DNA of 63,571 nucleotides, filler included, from Octopus bimaculoides (GCF_001194135.2; 5 parts of 5 records of this genome joined end to end with filler, not necessarily neighbours in it), one strand, 5' to 3'. Positions 608 through 25,329 are shown, counted from the whole stretch's first letter. Made by a program: numbers and translations. Notes: generated from the letters alone by a model not told the origin.

Positions 608-1522
608 TTAATTTGATGTAGACTGTAATGAATATACTGTACTTCTACTCACGTATGTCTTTTTAGAACATATGTGTTTCAAATTGTGACGAAATGATTT
701 GCTAATCCCAACATACAAAATAAAGTTGATAACATTATTAATACAAGCTATACTATCCAAAAAAGTATACATGACCATATTACTTTCATTTTGGAGTGAC
801 AACACCAAGAAATAAATAGATGCAGGAAACGTTGTTACCAGAAACAGTAAGTTTATAGCGATGACGACATAAATGGTATTTCTGGACTGCTCAGATGGAT
901 TGCGTTGAACATGCTGGCCAAGGTCGGGTCGATGGAGTATTTTATACACCAATAAAATAGAACTGATTATTAAAATCACAGCTGGTAAGAAGGAATAAAT
1001 CAAGAGTGCTGCACACAGAGTATATAGTTCATTCTTTAAAAATACTGTGAGCATTGTATACGTAACAACAACACATACACAAAGCAAAAAGAGTACGATG
1101 TAAGGCTTATAACGTCCAGAAGAATGAAATCTGGAAAACGGCCAAAAAATTGCCAACAGACGTTCGAGAGATATGATAACGGTTATCCAGGAGGAATATA
1201 TATTTATGGAAAAACTGACGGCTCCATATATTTCACTGTTATAAATACCTGTAAGTGACATTATGTCAGAATGCAAAGTTGATGATTGCCATATGATCCT
1301 TACGTAATTTAGCCAAATAACAGTGAAATCCACAACAGACAAACAATGAAGATATGGAACGATTTTAGTCTGGCGCATTTTCTTCTTCAAAAATATTACA
1401 AAAACGGCAAAATTCCCAATAGATCCAAATATTAATAAAATAATTGAAACATACTGTATACTTCTACGGAAATGTATATTTGAATCACTATGTGTCCGGC
1501 TACTATTGGGCATTGGGTCCAT
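608..1522 (-). CDS. Intronless rhodopsin-like (class A) GPCR, FMRFamide-receptor-like/orphan type, 304 aa (copy 1)
   Basis: Uninterrupted ATG-to-stop ORF with seven hydrophobic segments. Class A motifs: GSIGN (TM1), LSVVD (TM2), SLERLLAI (TM3), FLP (TM5), TTFP (TM6), NNVINFILY (TM7), SKSFR (helix 8). Confidence 0.92.
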   Translation of the reverse strand: MDPMPNSSRTHSDSNIHFRRSIQYVSIILLIFGSIGNFAVFVIFLKKKMRQTKIVPYLHCLSVVDFTVIWLNYVRIIWQSSTLHSDIMSLTGIYNSEIYGAVSFSINIYSSWITVIISLERLLAIFWPFSRFHSSGRYKPYIVLFLLCVCVVVTYTMLTVFLKNELYTLCAALLIYSFLPAVILIISSILLVYKILHRPDLGQHVQRNPSEQSRNTIYVVIAINLLFLVTTFPASIYFLVLSLQNESNMVMYTFLDSIACINNVINFILYVGISKSFRHNLKHICSKKTYVSRSTVYSLQSTSN

Positions 1523-5996: not shown

Positions 5997-6325
5997 AATG
6001 CAGCCTCACTCGCCAGCAAATTGGAGGTGAACACATATCTCAATGTCATCGGCGTGAAAAATTATTAAGAAGCTAGGATATTTTCCTACTTTTCTTAGTG
6101 TGAAAACAATGGGAGCCATATTTCACAAATAAAGAAATTATAGTCACCAATGCGGTGTTGAGGACTCATTTTCATCGTTTGCCCTGATTGTCTTATTAAT
6201 ACTTACATGTACCACGTACTCGCGTCGTTGTTTTTTTATGTCCTTTTTCTCCGTTTTTTTATTAACTATATATATATACTTGTTTTGCAAGATTTTTTAT
6301 GTGAAATCGTGTGTTGAAACAGATG

Positions 6326-6598
6326 TTGTTGTACTTGGGGATGGTCATATTGCCAGTTTAGCCAATAAAAATACAAAATGGCTGATAGTTAGCAAGGTGA
6401 GACACACATAAGAAAGAAGGAAACAAAGGACCACTGATGAGGTCACAGAAGTGTGACGAAAGAACTCTGGCCGAAATAAGATTAAGATTAAGATTAATGT
6501 AATATAAAGCTGAAAAAAAAAAAAAATTAACACCAAATATACAGTGCGTGTGTTTTTATTGGCTAAACTGGCAATATGACCATCCCCAAGTACAACAA
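6326..6598 (+). mobile_element. Short Penelope-like non-autonomous element bounded by a perfect 46-bp inverted repeat
   Basis: 6326-6371 is the exact reverse complement of 6553-6598. Contains an internal hammerhead motif. The 3' end resembles 49870-49925. Confidence 0.65.
6428..6472 (+). ncRNA. Minimal type I hammerhead ribozyme motif
   Basis: GGACCA-CTGATGA-G-GTCACA(gaag)TGTGAC-GAAA-G(aa)C-TC-TGGCC. All core bases are present, with one extra nt after A9, a 6-bp stem II and a 5-bp stem I with one bulge. Confidence 0.72.
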
Positions 6599-7461
6599 TA
6601 TATATATATACACATATGTATATATTAGAAAAAAATAACGTACTTAGAGATCTCGATGGTTGTACATTTACAGATTTTTATTAATATGTCACATGTTTTT
6701 ATAAATCATAAATTAGCGCTTGCTTCTATTCTAGTAGAATCTCCACATTAAAATTTTTTTGAGGGGATTCGTCTCTTTTTATAGTANNNNNNNNNNNNNN
6801 NNNNNNNNNNNNNNNNNNNNNNNNNNNNNNNNNNNNNNNNNNNNNNNNNNNNNNNNNNNNNNNNNNNNNNNNNNNNNNNNNNNNNNNNNNNNNNNNNNNN
6901 NNNNNNNNNNNNNNNNNNNNNNNNNNNNNNNNNNNNNNNNNNNNNNNNNNNNNNNNNNNNNNNNNNNNNNNNNNNNNNNNNNNNNNNNNNNNNNNNNNNN
7001 NNNNNNNNNNNNNNNNNNNNNNNNNNNNNNNNNNNNNNNNNNNNNNNNNNNNNNNNNNNNNNNNNNNNNNNNNNNNNNNNNNNNNNNNNNNNNNNNNNNN
7101 NNNNNNNNNNNNNNNNNNNNNNNNNNNNNNNNNNNNNNNNNNNNNNNNNNNNNNNNNNNNNNNNNNNNNNNNNNNNNNNNNNNNNNNNNNNNNNNNNNNN
7201 NNNNNNNNNNNNNNNNNNNNNNNNNNNNNNNNNNNNNNNNNNNNNNNNNNNNNNNNNNNNNNNNNNNNNNNNNNNNNNNNNNNNNNNNNNNNNNNNNNNN
7301 NNNNNNNNNNNNNNNNNNNNNNNNNNNNNNNNNNNNNNGTACCAAATGAGAATGATTCTCTCCAGGCACAACAGTGTATTAATATAAATATATATATATG
7401 TTTGTATACACACTCACACACATATATATTCGGAGATGAAATGTGTGTAAAACAGCTACAA

Positions 7462-7759: not shown

Positions 7760-9830
7760 CTACATTGACCACAAAATGTTCGTATTTCCCACTTGAAATC
7801 GTCATATTTGTTTATTTTTCCTTCTTTCACAGTGATTCTGTTGTCGCCGTAGCACGCTACGTAGATTTCTCTTTAATCACCGGCTACCGAAGTCTGGTCG
7901 AGTTATCGTATTGGATCATTGCATCCCACAGGATTTTGCAATTTTAATTTTCTGTGACTCCTGGAGTTTACTCATACTACGCCTTTGCACTTTGAAGGAC
8001 CTGTTTGTCATAGCGACTTTGGTATTCGCATTGTGTCAATTTCGAACATTCGCTAACGATGTGCCATACCGCTTCACCCCTCTCACCACACATTCTGCAT
8101 TTTTCGCTTCGCCAAACCAATTACATTTGTATTTGATGTAACTAGTTCTTAATGTTTACTCTTGGGCAGCACAGATTAGAGCCACTGTTCCCGGTTTTAA
8201 ATCAATTTTAGTCATCCATAGTCAACATTTTTCTGTCGGTCTTATCTTCAACATCCCTATGAAATTGTCCATGCATTCTTTTCTTTATCCACTTAGTTTC
8301 AGTTTTATTCATTCTCAAGTGCCTGTAGAACGCATTATCTTTGTAATCGTCCATCCTACACGAGCCTGACATTCTGACTTCCAATAATAGTGGTTCTGTA
8401 GCATCTTTTACACATCATGCTATGTTGTTTTCTACTACTGTAATGCTGTGTTCGCATCCCATCAGCCCTCTTCCCCCTCTTTTTCTTCATACATACACTC
8501 TGCTTGTATCCTTTTTTGGATGGAGTATCCCATATCTATGCAGCAACTTCCCTGTCTTTCTGTCTAAGCTGTTTAGTTCTTCTACTGTTCATGCGATTAC
8601 CTCTGCTCCGTATCTAAGGAGTGAAACCGCTCAGGTGTTGATAGCTTTGATCTTATTCCGTCTGTTTAATTTCTTCTTAAGTATCAGTTTCAGTCTGCGG
8701 AAGTACTCCACCTTAAATTTTTCTGTCATTTCTTTCTCCACCAATTTATCCATTTCGAATGTCCCTGAGTACTTATAGCCCGTGTCTTCTATTTGTTTCA
8801 TAACTTCCCTCGATGGTATCGCTAGCGTGTCCATAAATTTCATTTTGCTTCTCTTTAAGTCTAACACACCACACGTTTTCAGTCCGAACTCCATTTTGAT
8901 ATCAGCAATGAAAGTATACACCATATCAACGAGGAAACTGATTTGGGATTCATGAATAATGTGTGGTTGACTTTCTGTTGGCGGCTTTTGAATTCATACC
9001 CAGCTTTTGTTTACTCAGAATCAGTGTTAGTATTATCATGCACAGTGCAAATATCAGTAGGGGCAGGTAGTCTCCCTGGAAGATGCCTCTCCAGATTTTT
9101 ATTGTCTCTAAACTTCTTCCATATGCTGTCAGTTCCGTCGTCCTCTTCCCAAGCAATCGTTCAACATTCGATGCAATACCAAACAGGTTCATATATTCCA
9201 TGATCCGAGAATGTGGGATCATATCGTATGCCTTACGATTATCAATCCATGACATGGCTAAGTTACTTTTCCTCCTCTTGCACTCTCTAAGTACAGTTTT
9301 GTCTTCCAGGAGTTGATCCTTGGTACCTCTGAACTTACGCTTGCACCACTTCTGCTCATGTAGCTTGACTCCATTTTTTTTTTTCAGATGTCCGTACATT
9401 GACTCTGTGACTATTTCAGTCAATAATTTCCACATAAGAGGAAAGCAGGATAATGACATGTGATTGCCTTTTTGAATGTTTTTCAAACACAGCACTGTCC
9501 TACTCATTGTCAATTTCTCTAGTGTTACTTCGTCGGCATTTAACATGGTGTTGAGTTTTGTAGCTATTCGTGCATGACACTCACCAGATAGCTTCATCCA
9601 GTAGTCTCAAACTCTATCTGGTCCCGGGGCCATCTAGTCGCCCATTTTTTGCTAATTTCCTTTACTTGCCTAACTGAAATGTGTAGTTCCGTCTGTTGTG
9701 GGCAGACGACTGTTTGTTTCAGTTCTTGCAACCATCCAGCATCCTTCTTGTGGTCCATGTCTTCGCTCCATAGATTCTGGACGCCTGTTTTGAAAGTTCT
9801 CAGAGCCCATCCAGCCATTCGCTTTCACTT
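7760..9830 (-). mobile_element. Decayed, 5'-truncated R4/Dong-clade non-LTR retrotransposon
   Basis: RT motifs WIDNRKAYDMIPHS, RGIFQGD.LPLLIF and KYSG; downstream CRMCGERGEAVWHIVSEC (CCHC knuckle) and KINKYDDFKWEI (restriction-like endonuclease region). Multiple stops. Confidence 0.85.
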
Positions 9831-9859
9831 TGCCACCATCTTGGTAGTAGGCAGTTGAA

Positions 9860-10451
9860 TCGAGGCGTTGTTCCTCATATATGAATACCCTGATCACGCA
9901 CTGTACTTGCGTACGGGACTGCCGTTCCATTTGGTCCAAAATACTGTTTTTTGCGGCATCCGGCCCTGACAAGCTGATAGCGGAAGGCTTGGAACTTACA
10001 GGCATCAAATTGCATGTTCTTTTCTTCAATCCATTTATACATGGAATCCAGGTCTTTCTTTAGAAGATCTGAAACAGAATGTTCCTTTTTTGCTTGTAGT
10101 ACTTGTGTCGTTGGCATAACTAGTAAGTGTATTTGTCTATGTAAGTAATGGCATGTCCGAGAGAGCCACCATAAACCTAAGCAGCCCCTAGACATTTCTC
10201 CGAGGCAATTCATTCGCTATTAATGCATCAAATCAAGGAATACACACCCAGGTTTGAGTGATTCATTAGTGGTTTCGTCACCCATCATAATACTGCAAAT
10301 GCTGTGTAAGGCAGCTATTCTCTGAGAGGAAACCATGCTAGGTGTCAAGGACCAAGACATTATCTTAGAGGAATACGATCGGTTTCTACCTCAAAATGCG
10401 TTCCATAAGTAGCTGACATGGGAGGTTAGAGAGAGAGAGAGTAAGAGAGAA

Positions 10452-11230: not shown

Positions 11231-13069
11231 ACGTATCTTATATATACTTGTATGGATATATACATTTATAGATGCATGCAAACAAACATCTATATGTACA
11301 CGGATATACATCTATACATATCCCGGCGTATGTGCACACAATTCTTTTTACATTCACACACACACACTTACGCTTGTTTGTGCATATGTATCAATATATA
11401 TATATGTTCATTCAAATTCACAAACAAATACATATGCCAAACATAACCAATAGGCACATACATCCATGCGTATATACACATATATATACTTACACATTGA
11501 AATATATCTGCACAAACATTGCCAGATACATATGATTTTCTATATACACGCACACCTATAAAAGCATACACATACATTCGAACTCATGTAAACATACATA
11601 TAACCGTAAACACAGTTAAACTCTAAATGGTTTCTCTCCTAGACCACACACGTACGTAAATCCCTACGCACGTACATAATATATCACCAATTATTATAAC
11701 ACTTTAAACTTAATTACTAACGTTAGAAAATGAGTAAAGAATAAATAAAGAGAATAAAGTGAGTAAAGAATATATTTTAAAAATGGTAACAAAAGGTAAA
11801 TATAATCGTTTGAATGTAAGTACTGATAATTCGATCCATATATGACGACAATTAAACAACATAAAGCCATTTACAAAGAAAAAAATTTAGTTCCGTAGAA
11901 AACGTTAAGAACAGAGCTTGTATAGGTTGACAGATTATAACTAATGAAACTTGCATGGCTGATACTATTATTGATTATTTAGTATAACGATTGTGGAGAA
12001 TATATATTGTTAAACAAACTTTAAATAACCACTCATATTACGCTTAGTTTGTACGCCGCCTCGTCAAATGAGTAAACCAATTATTAGATATTTATATGGC
12101 AACACTCTCTTTATAATATGCAGACATCTGATAATCACATCGAACAAGGATGCTTTTGCATTTTCTCATAGCAAGCGCCTCAAAGAAGCTTTGTGTGCAA
12201 ACTATAGTATTCTGCGTTTTCGTTCAAATGTCTTAATTAGACAATACCCTAGGACTATTGTAGGAAACTGTTTTGACTATAGAATTAATCATAGTCTTGG
12301 ATTAGTGGAATTTTTTTTTCACATAGTAGAAGCTTACGTTTGGCTTATGATATGTTCTATATAAACTAGTATTAATCACTAGCTTAAAATCAAATACATT
12401 AGTCACACTCTGTTCTTCCTCGATGGCTATAGATGTGCCCGTATTTTTAAAGAAATTTCCTAAGTCGTAATTCAGACTCTTACTTTTCTTCGTTGTAACG
12501 GTTCAAGGAAATGAACAGCCCGCCGTCCATCTTGCAGAGCACTCGTAGCCTCTTGAAAATAATTTTTAATTTAATGAAAATATAAATACTAATCTTGTAA
12601 CTCCTTATTGAATCTGTAATTTCCCATCGTCACATCCTCACACTCGACGGAATTTGAACCCAACACTTAAAGAGCGTTCAAGAAATGTCGTAAAGTCTCT
12701 ACTCAATTCCCTCCGACGCATGTACATATTGATTTTAAAAATATGATTTCCGTAGGATTTCACGTCTTCTGTAGACATGACAGTTGTGCTACCATTGAAC
12801 AAAAGACTGCATTTGTCATTTTTGCATCCCAGGGGAGAGAATAAGACGAATGGAGTTCAATATTTATTCACTAATATTTTTAGTTTCATCTGAACTATTT
12901 CTGTTTATGTATATTTGTGAATATGTGTGCGTGTGCGTGTGTGATTGCGTGTACACGTGTACATGTGTGTATGTGTATGGATGAATGTGTGCGTGTGTGT
13001 GCGTGCATATATAGTTACGCACGCACGCACAAACACAAACACAAAATGAATTGATATTACTTTTAAGTA

Positions 13070-13340
13070 ATAAAAGTTTAGAATAGGAGGCACGTAGATA
13101 TCATAGGAATTCGCATATCCACTGGGATAGCAGAGCTACTGGGTAAGATTTTAGAAGATACGATTCTTGGAGCGAAGAGAGCAGAGATAAGCGGTGATAT
13201 ACGTATGGAAGATCCTAGAGGGATTGGCACTAAACTTGTCATCGAAAGTCATACCAGCCTCGGGAAAGATGTCATTGTACTGTTCTAAGTTTCCGTCTAG
13301 TGTGCGGACCAGATACTGCAGTAGCTTGGGATTCAAATAT
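13070..13340 (-). mobile_element. Highly decayed LINE RT C-terminal fragment
   Basis: LDGNLEQ..IFPEAGMTFDDKFSAN...AY....KNRIF...YVPPILNFY resembles the DLGVTFDxKL...YVRPILEY pattern of CR1/L2/jockey RTs. Confidence 0.45.
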
Positions 13341-13689
13341 TCATTGTTATTTAATATCTTGCGAAAACATCCAAGAAGGCTGACAGGAGTAGTGGCAGAT
13401 GTTTTCATCAAATAACAATTTTATTTTCTGCTCTCCAAAATCCAGACGAACCTACATTTCGAAAGTGGAAAACTTGACTCATTGACCCGAAATTTTGGAG
13501 TTGTACTTTCCTAACAAGAAATTAGATTTAAGGCAGTGAATTATCATCAAGAAAACTATAGATGTTAGAAGTGTATTAATCACAAAAAAAAAGTATTTTA
13601 CGTGATTTTGGTTGGCTAATATGTATCTTCCACACTGTAATCATACATTCTTTTATCCTTTTAATTTTCTCAGTCATTTCACTGCGGCC

Positions 13690-14057
13690 ATGTTAATTCT
13701 CTAAATGAGGTATTAACAGTAACTGCACGATAAAGTGAAGTATATTGCCACTTAAATGTGGCTGACCCCTAGGGGTGGATGTTACTGTTGCTTTTAGCCC
13801 CAGGAGGACATCTCCTCCAGCTGGCTTATCGACACACTTCTGTGTCCTGTTTGTTTTGCCAAGGGAATTTATCCCTCTCATCATGATCTGTAGCACGAAC
13901 GGACCCGCGTTTCAGGGTTATTTCCCTTCGTCAGCGTCCGATAGCCACCGATCTGCGATGAGAGAGATAATTCTTGGCAACCTTATGTATCTTTTTCCAG
14001 TGAAATTATTCACTGATATCGAAAAAGTGAAAACAAGCAATGTTAATTCTCTAAATG
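13690..14057 (-). repeat. 350-bp hammerhead-containing unit plus the start of a second direct copy (retrozyme-like or Penelope pLTR-like)
   Basis: ATGTTAATTCTCTAAATG occurs at 13690-13707 and again at 14040-14057, where the sequence runs into a 740-N gap. Many internal hairpins. Confidence 0.7.
13896..13940 (-). ncRNA. Canonical type I hammerhead ribozyme; predicted GUC cleavage between 13902 and 13901
   Basis: Minus strand reads CGGACG-CTGACGA-AGGG(aaataa)CCCT-GAAA-C(gcgg)G-TC-CGTTCG. Core is complete; stem I has 6 bp (one G.U), stem II 4 bp, stem III 2 bp. Confidence 0.9.
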
Positions 14058-14805
14058 NNNNNNNNNNNNNNNNNNNNNNNNNNNNNNNNNNNNNNNNNNN
14101 NNNNNNNNNNNNNNNNNNNNNNNNNNNNNNNNNNNNNNNNNNNNNNNNNNNNNNNNNNNNNNNNNNNNNNNNNNNNNNNNNNNNNNNNNNNNNNNNNNNN
14201 NNNNNNNNNNNNNNNNNNNNNNNNNNNNNNNNNNNNNNNNNNNNNNNNNNNNNNNNNNNNNNNNNNNNNNNNNNNNNNNNNNNNNNNNNNNNNNNNNNNN
14301 NNNNNNNNNNNNNNNNNNNNNNNNNNNNNNNNNNNNNNNNNNNNNNNNNNNNNNNNNNNNNNNNNNNNNNNNNNNNNNNNNNNNNNNNNNNNNNNNNNNN
14401 NNNNNNNNNNNNNNNNNNNNNNNNNNNNNNNNNNNNNNNNNNNNNNNNNNNNNNNNNNNNNNNNNNNNNNNNNNNNNNNNNNNNNNNNNNNNNNNNNNNN
14501 NNNNNNNNNNNNNNNNNNNNNNNNNNNNNNNNNNNNNNNNNNNNNNNNNNNNNNNNNNNNNNNNNNNNNNNNNNNNNNNNNNNNNNNNNNNNNNNNNNNN
14601 NNNNNNNNNNNNNNNNNNNNNNNNNNNNNNNNNNNNNNNNNNNNNNNNNNNNNNNNNNNNNNNNNNNNNNNNNNNNNNNNNNNNNNNNNNNNNNNNNNNN
14701 NNNNNNNNNNNNNNNNNNNNNNNNNNNNNNNNNNNNNNNNNNNNNNNNNNNNNNNNNNNNNNNNNNNNNNNNNNNNNNNNNNNNNNNNNNNNNNNNNGCC
14801 CATCG

Positions 14806-14825
<20 letters not shown>

Positions 14826-14837
<12 letters not shown>

Positions 14838-14960
14838 TATATACGACGGGGTTCTTTCAGTTCTCGCCTGCCAAATCCACTCACAAGGCTTTAATCGGGC
14901 CGCGGCTAGAGTACAATACACTTTCGCAAGGTGCCACTATGTGTTTGGGAAGCATGCTTC
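14826..14960 (-). mobile_element. SINE fragment (family C)
   Basis: Matches 22110-22270 and 33085-33235 (GCACCTTG...GGCCGAT.AAAGCCTT.TGAGTGGATTTG). Confidence 0.7.
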
Positions 14961-15841
14961 GTCTCCAACAGCTTCGCCTGCGCCTTTAAATCTAAATCTT
15001 ATTGAAATCCACAAAGGTATGGATTTCAGTTATCATATTTGTGAAAACTTGGAGAAAGAGAACATGTTACGAAACGTCAATCAGAAACGTTTAAAAAGGC
15101 CCAAAATAGTTTCCTATGTCAACGGTTGTCTGTCAATTGGGGTCAATAATAGCTTTGGAGATATATGTAAGATTATTTGTTGATACAATTGATGTACAAT
15201 AAATTCGTTTTATTTCTACAATGCATAAAATTTTGTAACTATATTTTTATATAACTTCTAGTAATAATTAATTATAAAAAAAAATATAATAGGACATTTA
15301 AACATGAAATGGCTATGACGAAGCATCTAAATAAAATAGGGTTACAGAAATCTATAGATATTTTTGAAAAATGGCTGAGAAATATTGGCCGATGGGATAT
15401 TGATGAGCTTTCAACAACACATCGAAGACTCCCCGCTCTCTTTCGAAAATATGTCCGAACTCTCTCAGAAAATATGTCCGAAAGCTGTTTAGGAACAGGT
15501 AGAGAGTATGTTGCGCCCAGGCTATTAATTAGAAAATTATAAATGTGAAACCTCGACATATATCTTAATGCGTTTGAATATATTATAATTTATATATATA
15601 TATATATATATATAAGCAAACACACACGCACAGATACACATAAGCGAATGTGGAAGGATGAAAAGGAGTTCTCAACACCGCATTGATGGATATATATATA
15701 TATCAATTACGTACAGCATGTGGAATGATTGACAAGAAAATATACATTGATAATACATAAATGATAATTGTTAGGATAGCTAGATATATTTAGGTAGATA
15801 GATACTTACTGAACCGGTAAGTTACTCAAAAATGAAAAGAC

Positions 15842-16768
15842 TTATGTCGTTGAATTCTGCAGCGAATACACCACATTTCTGTTCACTGCAGTCACTTTAC
15901 AAAACATTTGTTTCAAATTGTCGCGAAATGATTTGCTTCCGACAACATACATCATAAAGTTGAATACGTTATTGATACAAGCTAACATGTCCAAAAATAG
16001 GTATAAAACCGTATTCATGTTGTTTAGTAGTGACATCACCACATAATAAATAGATGTAGGGAAAGTTGTTAGAAGAAAAAGCGAGTTTATAGCGATGACA
16101 ACATAAACGGTACTCTTTTTCTTCTCTGAGGAATTTCTTTGAAAATTTTGACCGAGGTATGGTCGATGCAGTAATTTGTGTAACATAAGAATGGAACTTA
16201 TGAACAATATCATAGCTGGTATGAATGCATAAATGAAGTGTACAATACACAAAGCATACACTTTATTGTTCAAAAATTCTGTCAACATTGTATACATAAC
16301 AGTAACACATACAAGAAGACAAAGCAGCACAATATAAGGTTTATAACTTCCAGAAGAATTAAATCTGGAAAATGGGGAAAAAATTGCCAAAAGACGTTCA
16401 ACAGATATGATAACAGTTATCCAGGAGGAATACATATATATACAAAAAGTGAATCCCACATATAATTTACTGTTGAATATACCTGCATATGACCTGTTAT
16501 ATTGAAAATTAGTTGATAGCCATATTAATTTTGGTAAATATATCGAAATAGCAATGAAATCCACTAGAGCCAAGCAATGAAGATATGGAACAATTTTAGT
16601 TTGACGCATTTTCTTCCTGAAAAAAATTACAAAAACGGCTAAATTTCCGATAGATCCAAGTATCAATAAAATTATTGAACCATATCGTATAGTTATAAGA
16701 AAATGTATATTCGTATAGTTTTCTGTCTGGTTACTGTTGGTCGATGTGTTCACTTCTGTTTTGTTCAT
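15842..16768 (-). CDS. Intronless class A GPCR, 308 aa (copy 2, paralogue of 608-1522)
   Basis: Intact ORF with the same motifs (GSIGN, KKMRQTKIVPYLHCL, SVERLLAI, TTFP, NNVFNFMMY, SKSFR). Colinear with copy 1 apart from the N-terminus and a 1-aa indel. Confidence 0.92.
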   Translation of the reverse strand: MNKTEVNTSTNSNQTENYTNIHFLITIRYGSIILLILGSIGNLAVFVIFFRKKMRQTKIVPYLHCLALVDFIAISIYLPKLIWLSTNFQYNRSYAGIFNSKLYVGFTFCIYMYSSWITVIISVERLLAIFSPFSRFNSSGSYKPYIVLLCLLVCVTVMYTMLTEFLNNKVYALCIVHFIYAFIPAMILFISSILMLHKLLHRPYLGQNFQRNSSEKKKSTVYVVIAINSLFLLTTFPTSIYYVVMSLLNNMNTVLYLFLDMLACINNVFNFMMYVVGSKSFRDNLKQMFCKVTAVNRNVVYSLQNSTT

Positions 16769-19035: not shown

Positions 19036-19393
19036 GGAATTATGTACATCATTTACATTATTTACATCTGACGGATATTTGTCCTCATCTTGTTTGTTAT
19101 TCATTACTATGCCATATGCCCACGGGCATATAGCGTAGTAGTTAAGCGCACGGTCTACTAACCCCAAGATTCCGGGTTCGATTCCAGGCAGTGAAGTGAA
19201 TAATAATATTAATAATAATAATAATAATAATAACGTTCAAAAATACCTTAGGAATGAGAAACAAGGTCCGAAAGTTTCCCAAGGTACCTGATGAAGGCTG
19301 GAAGGTATATCGGCCGAAGACTTGTGTTAACAATAAACAAGATGAGGACAAATATCCGTGAAATGTAAATAATGTAAATAATGTACAATTCCC
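19036..19393 (+). mobile_element. tRNA-headed element with an (AAT)n spacer, a degenerate hammerhead and terminal inverted repeats
   Basis: A box TAGCGTAGTAGTT (19131-19143) and B box GGTTCGATTCC (19175-19185). Arms ~19043-19100 and ~19329-19387 are reverse complements. CTGATGA-A-GGCTG..CGGCC-GAAGAC at 19288-19321. Confidence 0.7.
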
Positions 19394-23096: not shown

Positions 23097-23415
23097 CAAG
23101 AGTGGGTTTGAATTTCTTAATAAAGTCCTTTTCTTTGCATTTTCTCTCAATTTCATTTCGCTTGTAAAGTTTATGGAATGGAAATATAATAAAAGTTTGA
23201 TGACCACATGTTGCCAGATGGTTACTCAGTGGTATTTGGCGGACTTCTGGGTTTTTAATCTGTTGTCGATGCACCCGTGAGCGTTCCGATAGTGCATTAC
23301 CTGTCTGGCCAACGTACAGTTCTTCACAATTAGGGCATTTGATGCAGTAGATTAGATTTCTACTTTTGCAGTTCATGTTCACATTGGTGAATATTTTCCC
23401 TGTTTTTGTGTTCAT
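23097..23415 (-). mobile_element. Penelope-like element GIY-YIG endonuclease domain (3' end of the ORF)
   Basis: NCKSRNLIYCIKCPNCEELYVGQTGNALSERSRVHRQQI...LSNHLATCGH...ERKCKEKDFIKKFKPTL: GIY-YIG pattern with the Penelope-type CCHH. Runs into a gap. Confidence 0.9.
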
Positions 23416-23829: not shown

Positions 23830-24534
23830 TTTTACCAAGTATTATTATTAGACGGAGAGAAACTGTGTTAGCAGAAAGAACGAGTTTATTGCAATGACTG
23901 CTTTGTTGAATTCTGTTGCAAATGTGACCGAGGTCGAGTCGATGGAATATTCATTATTAAATAAGGATAGAAGTCATTATTAAAAACACACCTGGTAGGA
24001 ATGAATAAATGAATTGTACATCACTCAAATTATACGTTCCATTTTTTAGAAAAGCCCTGCCAGCATTGTATACCTAACAGAAACACATGCATGAAGAAAG
24101 AGCAGTACAAGGTGAGACTTAAAACGTTGAAATGATTAAGGTCTGGACAAGGGAGGAAAACTTTCAACAAGAAAAAGGGGGTTCAAGAGATATGATAACA
24201 GCTATCCAGGAATAATATATACATACGGAAGAATTGAGGGACTCATATATTTCACAGTTTTAATCACCTGTATGAGCTATCTAAGCATTGCAAAATAGTT
24301 GACGGCCATATAATTGTTGTAAAAATATCGAAATAGCATTGAAATCTAGAAGAGCCAAACAATGAAGATACGCATCCGTTTCATGAAAAATAATTCAAAA
24401 ACTGTAAAATTCCTGATAGATCCAAAGGTCAATAAAATTACTGAAACATACCGTTTAGTTCTAAGAACATGAATATTTGTATCGTCTTCTATTTGGTTAC
24501 TGTTAGTCCGTACGTCCATTTCTGTTTTGTTCAT
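23830..24534 (-). pseudogene. GPCR pseudogene (copy 3, closest to copy 2)
   Basis: Starts MNKTEMDVRTNSNQIEDDTNIHV (copy 2: MNKTEVNTSTNSNQTENYTNIHF). A 19-nt deletion after ATGCGT shifts the frame. Nucleotide homology continues to the end of TM6, then SINE sequence begins. Confidence 0.88.
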
Positions 24535-25329
24535 ATTTTCTTCTACATCATCCACTGGACAGACGCTGTTGACAACAAAAATTGCTAAATGAATCTATTT
24601 TTTATTATATACTCTAAAAGACACCTTAAAATGCCACGCCTTGTTTACATATTTGCATAATACATCAAGCGTTATCATATATATATATGTCTTTCTATGT
24701 TATGTAGGTAAAAAGAAAGATATGCCTGTATGTATATACATGGCTATACGTGTATACAGGCATAGTTACAATGTGGCTTGCGTAGTTTCTACTGGCTGAG
24801 TATATAATGCTGTAGTTACTATAAACTTCTTAATGTTAATGAGATCGACAACGAGAACAATGACGATGATGATCTAGGTGAAGATTCTGACGATGATGAC
24901 ATGACAATGATGATCGTGATATGAATTGGAAGTGAAGTGAAGATCACCACTATAATTACGATTATGTTGTGAAGGTGATTATCTACGCTGGTTGATGGTG
25001 ATGCTGTAACTTTTATAATAGCATTTATATCGATTTGGCATGAAAAGCATAAATGAATCGATATCATGTTTTATTATAAAACTTACTAGACTACTTCCTG
25101 TCAAAGGTTTGATCACTGTTAAGTAACTGGAGCATTTCCGGTGTGGCCTTACTTAAAACTCTTCTGTAAGTTTTAACAAAATCAGTTACTTGCCTAAAGT
25201 ACATACCAGACCGTCATTTAATGAAATCATCATCATCAGATATAATTACTGCTTAATATGGCTTCTGAAAGAGTCAGTTAGTTTATCTTGTTTCTATTTG
25301 CGCATAATTTTTAATCATAGCAGACATCA

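What the first reader, a model, noticed from the sequence alone, without database searches (positions are those of the whole stretch)
13896..13940. Fully canonical type I hammerhead ribozyme on the minus strand
Seen: CUGACGA and GAAA cores, a GUC cleavage triplet, a 6-bp stem I, a 4-bp stem II and a 2-bp stem III capped by GCGG (near-palindromic ACGCGGGU). Known: hammerheads with such short stem III usually cleave as dimers. Inference: probably still active.
Basis: partly seen in the sequence, partly recalled or inferred. Interest (0 to 1): 0.85.

Follow-up and report, generated by a model that had tools for sequence, protein, structure and literature searches.

The report
Hammerhead ribozyme in a 350-bp repeat
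A small self-cutting RNA motif (a type I hammerhead ribozyme) really is encoded here, inside a 350-bp repeated, strongly folded non-coding element of an animal (cephalopod-like) genome; elements of this kind are already well known in animals, so this is an ordinary new example.

Summary
The minus strand 13940..13896 carries every conserved hammerhead core nucleotide, a GUC cleavage site (cut between 13902 and 13901), and helices of 6, 4 and 2 bp. A descriptor scan finds it once; shuffled windows give 0.001-0.011 hits.

The window is animal DNA, probably cephalopod. It has microsatellites, assembly gaps, intronless GPCR genes closest to Octopus, a LINE RT fragment and a GIY-YIG fragment.

The ribozyme caps a ~125-nt hairpin inside a 350-bp unit (13690-14039). 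That unit restarts at 14040 and then runs into a 740-N gap. As a circle it is far more structured than shuffles (z -7.5) and is 43% GC.

Twelve hammerheads from animal-derived metagenome contigs share its helix lengths, its AAAUAA loop 2 and its UAY/U loop 1, and their stems covary.

This matches the canonical metazoan type I hammerhead of tandem-repeat "non-LTR retrozymes" and satellite DNAs.

"Fully canonical" is overstated. The 10.1-11.1 pair is A-U rather than G-C. Loop 3 is not palindromic. Rfam's Hammerhead_1 model does not detect it, although it detects the relatives. Activity and tandem arrangement remain untested.

Verdict: new member of a known kind, of low to moderate interest.

The parts
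13896..13940 (-). Type I hammerhead ribozyme motif, 45 nt: helix I 13935-13940/13896-13901; core CUGACGA 13928-13934; helix II 13924-13927/13914-13917 with loop AAAUAA 13918-13923; GAAA 13910-13913; helix III A13910-U13903 and C13909-G13904 with loop GCGG 13905-13908; C17 = 13902
   Evidence: Sequence; descriptor scan gives this site only, apart from an alternative register of the same locus under looser settings; shuffles give 0.001-0.011 per window; CM R1 scores 47.1 bits
13901..13902 (-). Predicted self-cleavage site, 3' of C17 (13902). The downstream product would start with a 5'-OH at 13901
   Evidence: Position follows from hammerhead numbering applied to the sequence. The chemistry is established knowledge and was not tested here
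13890..13948 (-). Extended hammerhead: distal helix I (13944-13948 with 13890-13894) and internal loop 1 (UAU 13941-13943 opposite U 13895), the expected partner of loop 2
   Evidence: Full-length match to the model built from environmental hammerheads, with all 17 pairs standard. Loop 1 consensus is UAY/U in the relatives and in the Schistosoma-derived N79 sequence (PMC12550524)
13855..13980 (-). Imperfect hairpin of about 125 nt with the hammerhead at its tip (a long extension of helix I)
   Evidence: MFE -59.8 kcal/mol, z -7.3, 0 of 200 shuffles as stable
13690..14039 (-). One complete 350-bp repeat unit, non-coding, 43% GC. It corresponds to the predicted monomer RNA (circle) after cleavage at two successive ribozymes
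   Evidence: Direct repeat 13690-13707 = 14040-14057. Circular fold -122 kcal/mol, z -7.5. Its longest ORF has no homologues
14040..14057 (-). Start of a second copy of the unit: 18 nt identical to 13690-13707, or 21 nt with one mismatch counting from 14037/13687. It is cut off by the assembly gap
14058..14797 (.). Assembly gap of 740 N that hides the rest of the presumed array. A (TA)n microsatellite follows at about 14806-14845

Best explanation
This is a genuine, evolutionarily derived type I hammerhead ribozyme. It belongs to a short, non-coding, mobile repeat of an animal (probably cephalopod) genome, of the kind described as metazoan non-LTR retrozymes or hammerhead-bearing satellite DNA.

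Proposed mechanism:
1. The repeat is transcribed on the minus strand (inferred).
2. The nascent RNA folds into the hammerhead, helped by contacts between loop 1 (UAU/U) and loop 2 (AAAUAA). This could happen in a single copy, or by two neighbouring copies pairing their ACGCGGGU segments into a longer helix III (inferred from the literature).
3. The RNA cuts itself after C13902, leaving a 2',3'-cyclic phosphate and a 5'-OH (established hammerhead chemistry, not tested here).
4. Cutting at two successive copies releases a 350-nt monomer.
5. A host RNA ligase can close the monomer into a highly base-paired circular RNA, in which the ribozyme core is locked in an inactive rod-like fold (inferred).
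6. That RNA is thought to be copied back into DNA by reverse transcriptases of Penelope-like elements (literature hypothesis).

Shown here: the motif, its non-random nature, the shared class features with covarying relatives, the long hairpin, the 350-bp repeat unit, its strong predicted structure, and the animal genomic context with Penelope-type remnants.

Not shown: transcription, cleavage, circularisation, mobility, and how many copies the array holds.
For: Motif:
- All core nucleotides and three helices are present in the type I arrangement.
- It is the only descriptor site in the window with helix I of at least 4 bp; shuffles give 0.001-0.011 per window.
- The architecture equals the published canonical metazoan type I: helix I 6 bp, helix II 4 bp, helix III 1-2 bp with a 2-4 nt loop (PMC4209133).
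- It has the same 45-nt layout as the Rfam RF00163 consensus. That consensus also has C at position 7, and its helix III ACGcgCGU differs from the window's ACGCGGGU by one base.

Relatives:
- A metagenome scan with only the core, the loop 2 sequence and the spacings fixed returned 13 loci.
- Twelve of them have paired stems and lie on animal-type contigs carrying KLHL, LARP, piggyBac and GH20 sequences.
- In the joint alignment helices I and II covary. 77.5% of cells are paired, against 27-41% with slid partners, and 0 of 500 shuffles reach the observed value.
- The unconstrained loop 1 positions are UAY/U, as in the window and in the Schistosoma Sm1-derived N79 ribozyme.
- A covariance model built without the window sequence matches 13890-13948(-) end to end at 47.1 bits. 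The next best hit in the window scores 12 bits.

Context:
- The hammerhead caps a hairpin with z -7.3.
- The unit is 350 bp, its start is repeated directly after its end, and it then runs into a gap.
- The unit is 43% GC, and its circular fold has z -7.5.
- It is non-coding.
- These values match non-LTR retrozymes: 150-450 bp tandem units (~300 bp typical), low GC (<45% in Figure 1C of PMC7229834, <50% in its text), circRNAs of ~170-400 nt, highly self-paired, and 350-390 bp in mussel.
- The window also holds a GIY-YIG fragment and a Penelope-type minimal hammerhead at 6434-6467. This fits the reported co-occurrence of retrozymes and Penelope-like elements.
Against: - Rfam finds no hammerhead family here, even at E<=10 in a 66-nt search. 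The same tool scores the relatives at 31-43 bits. This copy is therefore divergent from the curated model.
- The likely causes are A10.1-U11.1, G-C instead of C-G at the top of helix II, and a G.G mismatch in the palindromic helix III.
- Only one full unit plus 18-21 nt of a second is visible, so tandem organisation is inferred, not seen.
- No other copy was found in the window, in the public collections by exact pattern or by an ORF-based protein search. No eukaryotic genome collection was available to search.
- The hammerhead fold is 7-8 kcal/mol less stable than a competing fold that pairs the core.
- The environmental relatives were retrieved with a pattern taken from this very sequence. 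The 47-bit model score is therefore largely by construction, and only the stem pairing and loop 1 are independent evidence.
- There are no expression or cleavage data.
Confidence: 0.7

Rival explanations
1. It is a hammerhead-derived relic: a real retrozyme or satellite copy that has decayed and no longer cleaves efficiently.
For: - A10.1-U11.1 occurs only in the window among the 12 distinct class members, 10 of which have G-C.
- Loop 3 (GCGG) breaks the palindrome that most relatives have (ACAGCUGU).
- There is no Rfam signal, although relatives score 31-43 bits.
- A competing fold is about 7 kcal/mol more stable.
- It is the only copy in 27 kb.
Against: - Every invariant core nucleotide is intact and all 17 pairs are standard.
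- Axolotl HHR_Amex2, which has a U.U mismatch at the base of helix II and a 2-bp helix III with a tetraloop, still cleaves: 22% as a monomer and much better as a dimer (PMC7229834).
- An inactive rod-like ground state is normal for ribozyme-bearing circular RNAs.
Confidence: 0.3
2. It is a single dispersed insertion of a short hammerhead-bearing retroelement (332 bp, 13708-14039) flanked by an 18-bp target-site duplication, not a tandem array.
For: - Only 18-21 nt of repeat are visible.
- The gap could instead be caused by the (TA)n tract on its far side.
- All environmental relatives are single dispersed copies. L009, L011 and L014 share a common 3' end and have variable 5' ends, as expected of retrotransposed copies.
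- Retrozyme families can be largely monomeric, with a monomer proportion from 0 to 1.
- Target-site duplications in metazoan retrozymes are longer than 4 bp.
Against: - The contig would have to end exactly at the last base of the duplication, which is unlikely. A break inside a repeated unit is what short-read assemblers produce.
- There is no A-rich tail. The A-rich tract at 14020-14039 is part of a predicted hairpin.
Confidence: 0.35
3. It is a chance match to the hammerhead consensus in non-functional DNA.
For: - The motif is short.
- A genome scan over very many windows will meet chance hits at 0.001-0.011 per window.
- There is no Rfam hit.
- No homologous copy could be retrieved.
Against: Several independent features are not required by the descriptor:
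- a helix I extension with a UAU/U internal loop exactly 6 bp from the core, and an AAAUAA hexaloop on a 4-bp helix II, as in natural relatives and in Sm1;
- a position at the tip of a hairpin with z -7.3;
- location inside a 350-bp repeated, highly structured unit;
- a second, Penelope-type hammerhead and a GIY-YIG fragment in the same window.
Confidence: 0.04
4. It is a domesticated cis-acting ribozyme in the 3' region of the GPCR gene at 15842-16768, which lies on the same strand with its stop codon 1.9 kb upstream. It would control mRNA stability, as in the rodent Clec2 3'-UTR hammerheads.
For: - It is on the same strand as, and downstream of, an intact intronless GPCR ORF.
- 3'-UTR hammerheads exist in mammals (PMC6155905).
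Against: - It lies 1.9 kb from the stop codon, with an assembly gap in between.
- The paralogous GPCR copies share similarity only to about 43 nt beyond the stop codon, so the ribozyme is not part of the duplicated gene unit.
- Its position inside a repeated unit points to a mobile element.
Confidence: 0.03

Closest known systems
Canonical metazoan type I hammerheads (Rfam RF00163 Hammerhead_1: Schistosoma Sm-alpha/Sm1, newt satellite 2 and similar)
   Same: - The same 45-nt layout and type I topology.
- Helix I 6 bp, helix II 4 bp with a hexaloop containing AAAUA, and a very short helix III with a tetraloop.
- C at position 7.
- UAY immediately 5' and U immediately 3' of helix I, as in the Sm1-derived N79 sequence.
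   Different: - The stem sequences are unrelated.
- The 10.1-11.1 pair is A-U instead of the conserved G-C.
- The loop 2 register is AAAUAA rather than CAAAUA.
- Helix III/loop 3 (ACGCGGGU) is one substitution away from a palindrome.
- It scores below anything Rfam reports.
Metazoan non-LTR retrozymes (Cervera and de la Pena 2020, PMC7229834), for example the mussel 350-390 bp and axolotl 330/350 bp repeats
   Same: - A type I hammerhead in a non-coding unit of 350 bp.
- GC of 43%.
- A strongly self-paired predicted circle (z -7.5).
- Penelope-type remnants in the same genome region.
[quoted passage not shown]
   Different: - Only 1.05 copies are visible before an assembly gap.
- There is no evidence of circular RNA.
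- No sequence similarity to any described family could be tested.
- I found no paper reporting such elements in cephalopods.
Environmental animal-contig hammerheads L002-L012 and L014
   Same: - The same spacing and the same AAAUAA loop 2.
- UAY/U loop 1, in particular L009/L011/L014: GGC UAU N6 CUGACGA N4 AAAUAA N4 GAAAC N4 GUC N6 U GC.
- Covarying helices I and II.
   Different: - No similarity outside the ribozyme.
- The relatives have G10.1-C11.1, and most have the palindromic ACAGCUGU.
- They occur as single dispersed copies.
Minimal hammerheads of Penelope-like element pseudo-LTRs (PMC4209133)
   Same: - Type I hammerheads carried by retroelements and thought to act as dimers.
- One such motif is present in this window at 6434-6467.
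   Different: - The 13.9-kb ribozyme has canonical 6/4 helices and loop-loop partner nucleotides.
- It has no unpaired base between A9 and 10.1.
- It has no adjacent Penelope ORF. The nearest RT, at 8950-9597, matches Pfam RVT_1; I read it as LINE-type from its motifs, which was not tested.

Membership tests
Hammerhead ribozyme (motif definition) | Conserved core nucleotides C3 U4 G5 A6 N7 G8 A9, G12 A13 A14, the A15.1-U16.1 pair, and H17 (not G) at the cleavage site | tested here: met
   CUGACGA, GAAA, A13910-U13903 and C17 = 13902 are read directly from the sequence
Hammerhead ribozyme (motif definition) | Three helices around the core. For type I, helix I is the open one | tested here: met
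   Helices of 6, 4 and 2 bp, with helix I open and extended by a further 5 bp
Hammerhead ribozyme (motif definition) | Highly conserved G10.1-C11.1 pair at the base of helix II | tested here: not met
   The window has A-U. Ten of the 12 distinct aligned sequences have G-C. PMC4209133 calls this pair typical of canonical hammerheads. It is a strong preference rather than an absolute requirement: axolotl Amex2 has U.U there and still cleaves
Hammerhead ribozyme (motif definition) | Mg2+-dependent site-specific self-cleavage | not testable with these tools
   Needs in vitro transcription of monomer and dimer
Canonical metazoan type I hammerhead | Helix I 6 bp and helix II 4 bp with loop nucleotides able to interact; helix III 1-2 bp with a 2-4 nt, usually palindromic, loop | tested here: met
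   Helix lengths and the loop 1 UAU/U and loop 2 AAAUAA match the relatives and Sm1/N79. Exception: loop 3 GCGG is not palindromic. The tertiary contacts themselves are inferred
Canonical metazoan type I hammerhead | Covariation of the helices among homologues | tested here: inconclusive
   Helices I and II covary across the class. However, the set was retrieved with a pattern taken from this sequence, and no true homologues of this element (same family, same genome) were available
Rfam RF00163 Hammerhead_1 | Covariance-model score at or above the gathering threshold (34 bits) | tested here: not met
   No match at gathering or at E<=10. Positive controls: L002/L012 42.8 bits, L010 39.2 bits, L009 31.2 bits. 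The model is narrow, because well-formed relatives such as L009 also fall below 34 bits
Metazoan non-LTR retrozyme | Type I hammerhead within tandem repeats of about 150-450 bp (dimers to multimers) | tested here: inconclusive
   One 350-bp unit plus the first 18-21 nt of a second, then a 740-N gap. An 18-bp target-site duplication is not excluded
Metazoan non-LTR retrozyme | Low GC (<45% in Figure 1C of PMC7229834, <50% in its text), non-coding, no LTR/PBS/PPT, and a highly self-paired monomer RNA | tested here: met
   GC 43%; circular MFE -122 kcal/mol, z -7.5; no homologue of the longest ORF; no terminal repeats within the unit
Metazoan non-LTR retrozyme | Expression as linear and circular RNAs of unit length | not testable with these tools
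   Needs RNA-seq, northern blots, or RT-PCR with divergent primers
Metazoan non-LTR retrozyme | Co-occurrence with Penelope-like elements in the genome | tested here: met
   GIY-YIG domain fragment at 23098-23415(-) and a Penelope-type minimal hammerhead at 6434-6467(+). No intact Penelope element is seen in the window
Penelope-like element pLTR minimal hammerhead | Helix II 6-8 bp, helix I 4-5 bp, an unpaired base between A9 and 10.1, helix III absent or minimal, no loop-loop partners, and a location in the pLTR next to the RT-EN ORF | tested here: not met
   The 13.9-kb ribozyme has a 6/4 architecture, no extra base after A9, and no adjacent Penelope ORF. The 6434 motif, by contrast, fits these features

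The most novel reading that the evidence does not exclude
The unit could belong to an active retrozyme family in a cephalopod. That lineage has no reports of hammerhead circular RNAs in the literature I could search. The family would produce abundant 350-nt circular RNAs.

A bolder variant: the copy lies on the same strand 1.9 kb downstream of an intronless chemoreceptor-like GPCR gene, so it could have been co-opted to cleave that gene's transcript.
Probability: 0.1. Interest if true: 0.5.

Novelty: new member of a known kind. Interest (0 to 1): 0.25.

Why it matters
If it is active, it adds cephalopod molluscs to the animal lineages that carry self-cleaving, circle-forming retrozyme RNAs.

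It would also provide a natural hammerhead variant with A10.1-U11.1 and an imperfect dimer helix III. Such a variant could show how much deviation the canonical type I scaffold tolerates.

The case also shows that the curated Rfam type I model misses well-formed members of the class whose stems differ from the Schistosoma/newt sequences. That matters for genome annotation.

It does not change what is known about hammerhead biology.

Tried and rejected
Searches that led nowhere:
- Bacterial, phage or plasmid origin: no megablast hit of the region around the finding (13000-15000 or 12000-16000) in E. coli genomes, plasmids or phages and no tRNA in the window. The window is eukaryotic.
- Rfam at gathering and at E<=10, three times over this site: nothing relevant.
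- Other copies of the unit in the window: none.
- Exact-pattern scans for the specific ribozyme in metagenome and viral contigs: none.
- Reaching other genomic copies through the unit's longest ORF as a 'protein' query: no hits.
- Exact look-ups of the unit's 67-aa ORF and of the GPCRs, to identify the source assembly: not on record. One Logan contig for a GPCR paralogue gave no useful context.

Ideas considered and rejected:
- Poly-A tail or SINE reading of the A-rich tract 14020-14039: rejected, because the tract pairs with a U-rich tract in a predicted hairpin.
- The hairpin at 13829-13848 as a relic of a second, Penelope-type hammerhead homologous to 6434-6467: the similarity is limited to about 20 nt (E 0.03) and does not extend in a pairwise alignment.
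- RNAcofold of two copies, to show the dimeric helix III: the program preferred an unrelated intermolecular duplex, so the result is uninformative.

Correction: I first measured the period as 351 bp. It is 350 bp.

Full report
**What is at the coordinates**

Read on the minus strand, 13940 to 13896 is CGGACG-CUGACGA-AGGG-AAAUAA-CCCU-GAAA-C-GCGG-G-U-C-CGUUCG. In hammerhead numbering:
- C3 U4 G5 A6 C7 G8 A9 are present.
- Helix II is 10.1-10.4 AGGG paired with 11.4-11.1 CCCU, closed by a six-base loop.
- G12 A13 A14 are present.
- Helix III is A15.1-U16.1 and C15.2-G16.2, closed by GCGG.
- C17 is at 13902.
- Helix I has six pairs, one of them G-U.

Helix I is the open helix, so the topology is type I. 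The predicted cut lies between 13902 and 13901.

**Is it more than chance?**

- A descriptor scan of both strands (core, then helices I, II and III) finds this site as the only one in the window with helix I of at least 4 bp; looser settings add only an alternative register of the same locus.
- In 2000 dinucleotide-preserving shuffles of the non-N segments, the expectation is 0.011 per window for a loose descriptor and 0.001 for the observed 6/4/2 helix lengths.
- That would not be decisive across a whole genome scan. Several features that the descriptor does not ask for add independent weight; they are described below.

**What the window is**

- It is not prokaryotic. There is no match of the region around the finding (13000-15000 or 12000-16000) to E. 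coli genomes, plasmids or phages and no tRNA in the window.
- It has about 33% GC, many CA, GA and TA microsatellites, and several runs of N that are assembly gaps.
- It encodes two intact intronless rhodopsin-type GPCRs, at 608-1522(-) and 15842-16768(-), plus a fragment of a third. It also carries a reverse-transcriptase fragment matching Pfam RVT_1 (LINE-type by my reading of its motifs) at 8950-9597(-) and a GIY-YIG endonuclease fragment at 23098-23415(-).
- The only named homologue of the GPCR is an Octopus sinensis protein at 41% identity.
- I conclude that this is a draft animal genome, probably a cephalopod. The species could not be identified.

**Anatomy around the ribozyme**

- Helix I continues beyond the six proximal pairs. 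There is an internal loop (UAU at 13941-13943 opposite U at 13895), then five more pairs (13944-13948 with 13890-13894), and then a long imperfect stem.
- The whole 13855-13980 region folds as a hairpin with the ribozyme at its tip: -59.8 kcal/mol, z -7.3.
- The 18 bases at 13690-13707 recur exactly at 14040-14057, or 21 bases with one mismatch counting from 13687/14037. The sequence then runs into 740 N.
- This defines a 350-bp unit (13690-14039) whose second copy starts immediately after the first.
- The unit is 43% GC. Its longest ORF has no homologue among 5.8 billion proteins.
- As a 350-nt circle on the minus strand it folds to -122 kcal/mol, against -81 +/- 5.5 for shuffles (z -7.5).

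**Comparative evidence**

No eukaryotic genome collection was available, and no second copy exists in the window.

- I scanned the metagenome contigs with a pattern that fixed only the core, the loop 2 sequence, GAAAC, GUC and the spacings, leaving all stems as N.
- Thirteen loci matched. In twelve of them the unconstrained stems pair.
- The contigs carry animal genes: a BTB-BACK-Kelch protein, a La/SUZ-C protein, a piggyBac-type transposase fragment and a hexosaminidase exon.
- In the joint alignment helices I and II covary. 77.5% of cells form standard pairs, against 27-41% when partners are slid, and 0 of 500 shuffles reach the observed values.
- The positions flanking helix I, which were also unconstrained, are UAY on the 5' side and U on the 3' side in most sequences. 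The window has UAU and U.
- Three contigs (L009, L011, L014) read GGC-UAU-N6-CUGACGA-N4-AAAUAA-N4-GAAAC-N4-GUC-N6-U-GC. This is the window's pattern with entirely different but complementary stems.
- The Schistosoma Sm1-derived N79 ribozyme printed in PMC12550524 has the same plan: UAC, a 6-bp helix I, CUGAUGA, GUCC-CAAAUA-GGAC, GAAAC, then GUC, 6 bp and U.
- A covariance model built from ten environmental sequences, without the window, matches 13890-13948(-) end to end at 47.1 bits with every pair standard. The next best hit in the window scores 12 bits.
- Most of that score is by construction, because the retrieval pattern came from this sequence. The independent parts are the stem pairing and loop 1.

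**The Rfam result**

- Rfam reports no hammerhead family at this site, at the gathering threshold or at E<=10 in 451-nt and 66-nt searches.
- As a control I ran the same tool on the relatives. RF00163 Hammerhead_1 hits L002 and L012 at 42.8 bits and L010 at 39.2 bits. It scores L009 at 31.2 bits, just below the 34-bit threshold.
- The printed consensus (aUccagCUGAcGAGUCCCAAAUAGGACGAAACGcgCGUCcuggAu) has exactly the 45-nt layout of the finding. It treats helix III as a four-pair palindrome.
- So the model can see this class, but it is strongly tied to the GUCC/GGAC stem.
- The window's copy loses score in three places: A-U instead of G-C at 10.1-11.1; G-C instead of C-G at the top of helix II; and ACGCGGGU, where the consensus palindrome is ACGCGCGU.
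- I therefore record the curated-threshold test as not met, and 'fully canonical' as overstated.
- The G10.1-C11.1 pair is described as highly conserved (PMC4209133). It is G-C in 10 of the 12 distinct sequences aligned, and the window is the only A-U.

**Comparison with what is known**

- PMC4209133 describes the canonical metazoan type I hammerhead: helix I 6 bp, helix II 4 bp, interacting loops, and helix III of 1-2 bp with a 2-4 nt, usually palindromic, loop. Such ribozymes cleave poorly alone and well as dimers in tandem repeats.
- PMC7229834 shows that most such ribozymes sit in tandem repeats of about 150-450 bp with low GC (<45% in its Figure 1C, <50% in its text). These are the non-LTR retrozymes, expressed as highly self-paired circular RNAs of 170-400 nt. 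The mussel units are 350-390 bp.
- The same paper shows that axolotl HHR_Amex2, with a two-pair helix III, a tetraloop and a weak base of helix II, cleaves 22% as a monomer and much better as a dimer.
- Retrozymes co-occur with Penelope-like elements and, in Xenopus, derive from their pseudo-LTRs. Families vary from fully tandem to fully monomeric.
- The element here fits this description on the ribozyme type, unit length, GC, predicted structure, absence of coding capacity, and Penelope-type remnants nearby.
- I found no paper reporting hammerheads or retrozymes in cephalopods. Only Penelope-like elements are reported there.

**Most likely mechanism**

1. The unit or units are transcribed on the minus strand (inferred).
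2. The nascent RNA transiently forms the hammerhead. It is stabilised by loop 1-loop 2 contacts, or by two copies pairing their ACGCGGGU segments. That dimer helix would have six Watson-Crick pairs and two G.G mismatches.
3. The RNA cleaves after C13902.
4. Two cuts release a 350-nt RNA with 5'-OH and cyclic-phosphate ends.
5. A host ligase can circularise it.
6. The mature RNA adopts the more stable rod-like fold, in which CGGAC pairs with GUCCG and parts of the core are paired. In nearest-neighbour terms this fold is -15.8 against -8.1 kcal/mol for the 45-mer, and -59.8 against -52.7 kcal/mol in the 136-nt context. It keeps the ribozyme off.
7. Copying back into DNA by Penelope-type reverse transcriptase is a literature hypothesis.

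Steps 1 to 7 are inferred. Only the sequence features are shown here.

**Rivals**

- (a) A decayed copy that no longer cleaves. The deviations listed above make this a real possibility (about 0.3).
- (b) A single dispersed insertion flanked by an 18-bp target-site duplication rather than an array (about 0.35 as an alternative to the tandem reading).
  - For: the relatives are dispersed single copies, and the gap may be due to the (TA)n tract beyond it.
  - Against: the contig would then have to end exactly at the last duplicated base.
- (c) Pure chance (about 0.04).
- (d) A co-opted ribozyme in the 3' region of the upstream GPCR gene (about 0.03). The paralogues share similarity only to about 43 nt past the stop codon.

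**Verdict**

This is a real type I hammerhead motif in a retrozyme- or satellite-type repeat of an animal genome. It is a new member of a well-known kind, and a slightly divergent copy whose activity and tandem state need the experiments listed. Interest is low to moderate.

Noticed in passing
window 6434-6467 (+), within 6310-6614: A second hammerhead-like motif: CCA CUGAUGA G GUCACA GAAG UGUGAC GAAA GAAC U C UGG. It fits the published Penelope-type minimal hammerhead: an unpaired base after A9, a 6-bp helix II with G10.1-C11.1, a short bulged helix I, and a one-pair helix III. A descriptor tailored to it gives 0.002 hits per shuffled window. It lies between the arms of a 66-nt, 89% inverted repeat (6310-6375 / 6549-6614; the whole region has fold z -11.8), next to (GATTAA)3 and an A14 tract. 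Rfam does not report it.
   Followed up: partly
window 23098-23415 (-): An ORF starting at 23415 encodes a GIY-YIG endonuclease domain (Pfam E 8e-7) with Cys/His-rich flanks, as in Penelope-like element endonucleases. It is cut off by an N gap. No reverse-transcriptase ORF was seen next to it.
   Followed up: partly
window 608-1522 (-), 15842-16768 (-), ~24181-24562 (-): Three paralogous intronless rhodopsin/Srw-type GPCR copies, two intact and one fragment, 70-80% identical at the DNA level and spaced about 15.2 and 7.8 kb apart. The best named homologue is an uncharacterised Octopus sinensis protein at 41% identity. This looks like a lineage-specific receptor cluster.
   Followed up: partly
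window 8950-9597 (-) and 9670-10213 (-): A fragment of a non-LTR (LINE-type, by my reading of its motifs) reverse transcriptase (RVT_1, E 6.5e-9), with further broken ORFs upstream on the same strand. These are remains of another retroelement.
   Followed up: no
window 13829-13848 (-) versus 6440-6459 (+): Inside the 350-bp unit, the hairpin GACACA-GAAG-UGUGUC resembles helix II of the minimal hammerhead (GUCACA-GAAG-UGUGAC), with a compensatory A-U/U-A swap (blastn E 0.03). The similarity does not extend beyond about 20 nt, so shared origin is unproven.
   Followed up: yes
loci L009 1632-1704, L011 1319-1391, L014 6678-6750 (and L002-L012): Twelve canonical type I hammerheads with loop 2 AAAUAA lie on animal-derived metagenome contigs, one per contig. 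L009, L011 and L014 share a 160-220 bp element that ends about 55 nt after the ribozyme and has variable 5' ends, like 5'-truncated retrotransposed copies. Only those with the GUCC/GGAC stem pass Rfam's threshold for RF00163. The model therefore misses well-formed members of the class.
   Followed up: partly
window 13584-13592: A run of nine A on the plus strand, which is T9 on the ribozyme strand, lies about 100 nt downstream of the end of the unit. It could act as an RNA polymerase III terminator if the unit is transcribed by that enzyme. This is pure speculation.
   Followed up: no
window 19043-19101 / 19329-19387: An inverted repeat of 59 nt, 92% complementary, with arms 227 nt apart. It looks like a MITE or a foldback element.
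   Followed up: no
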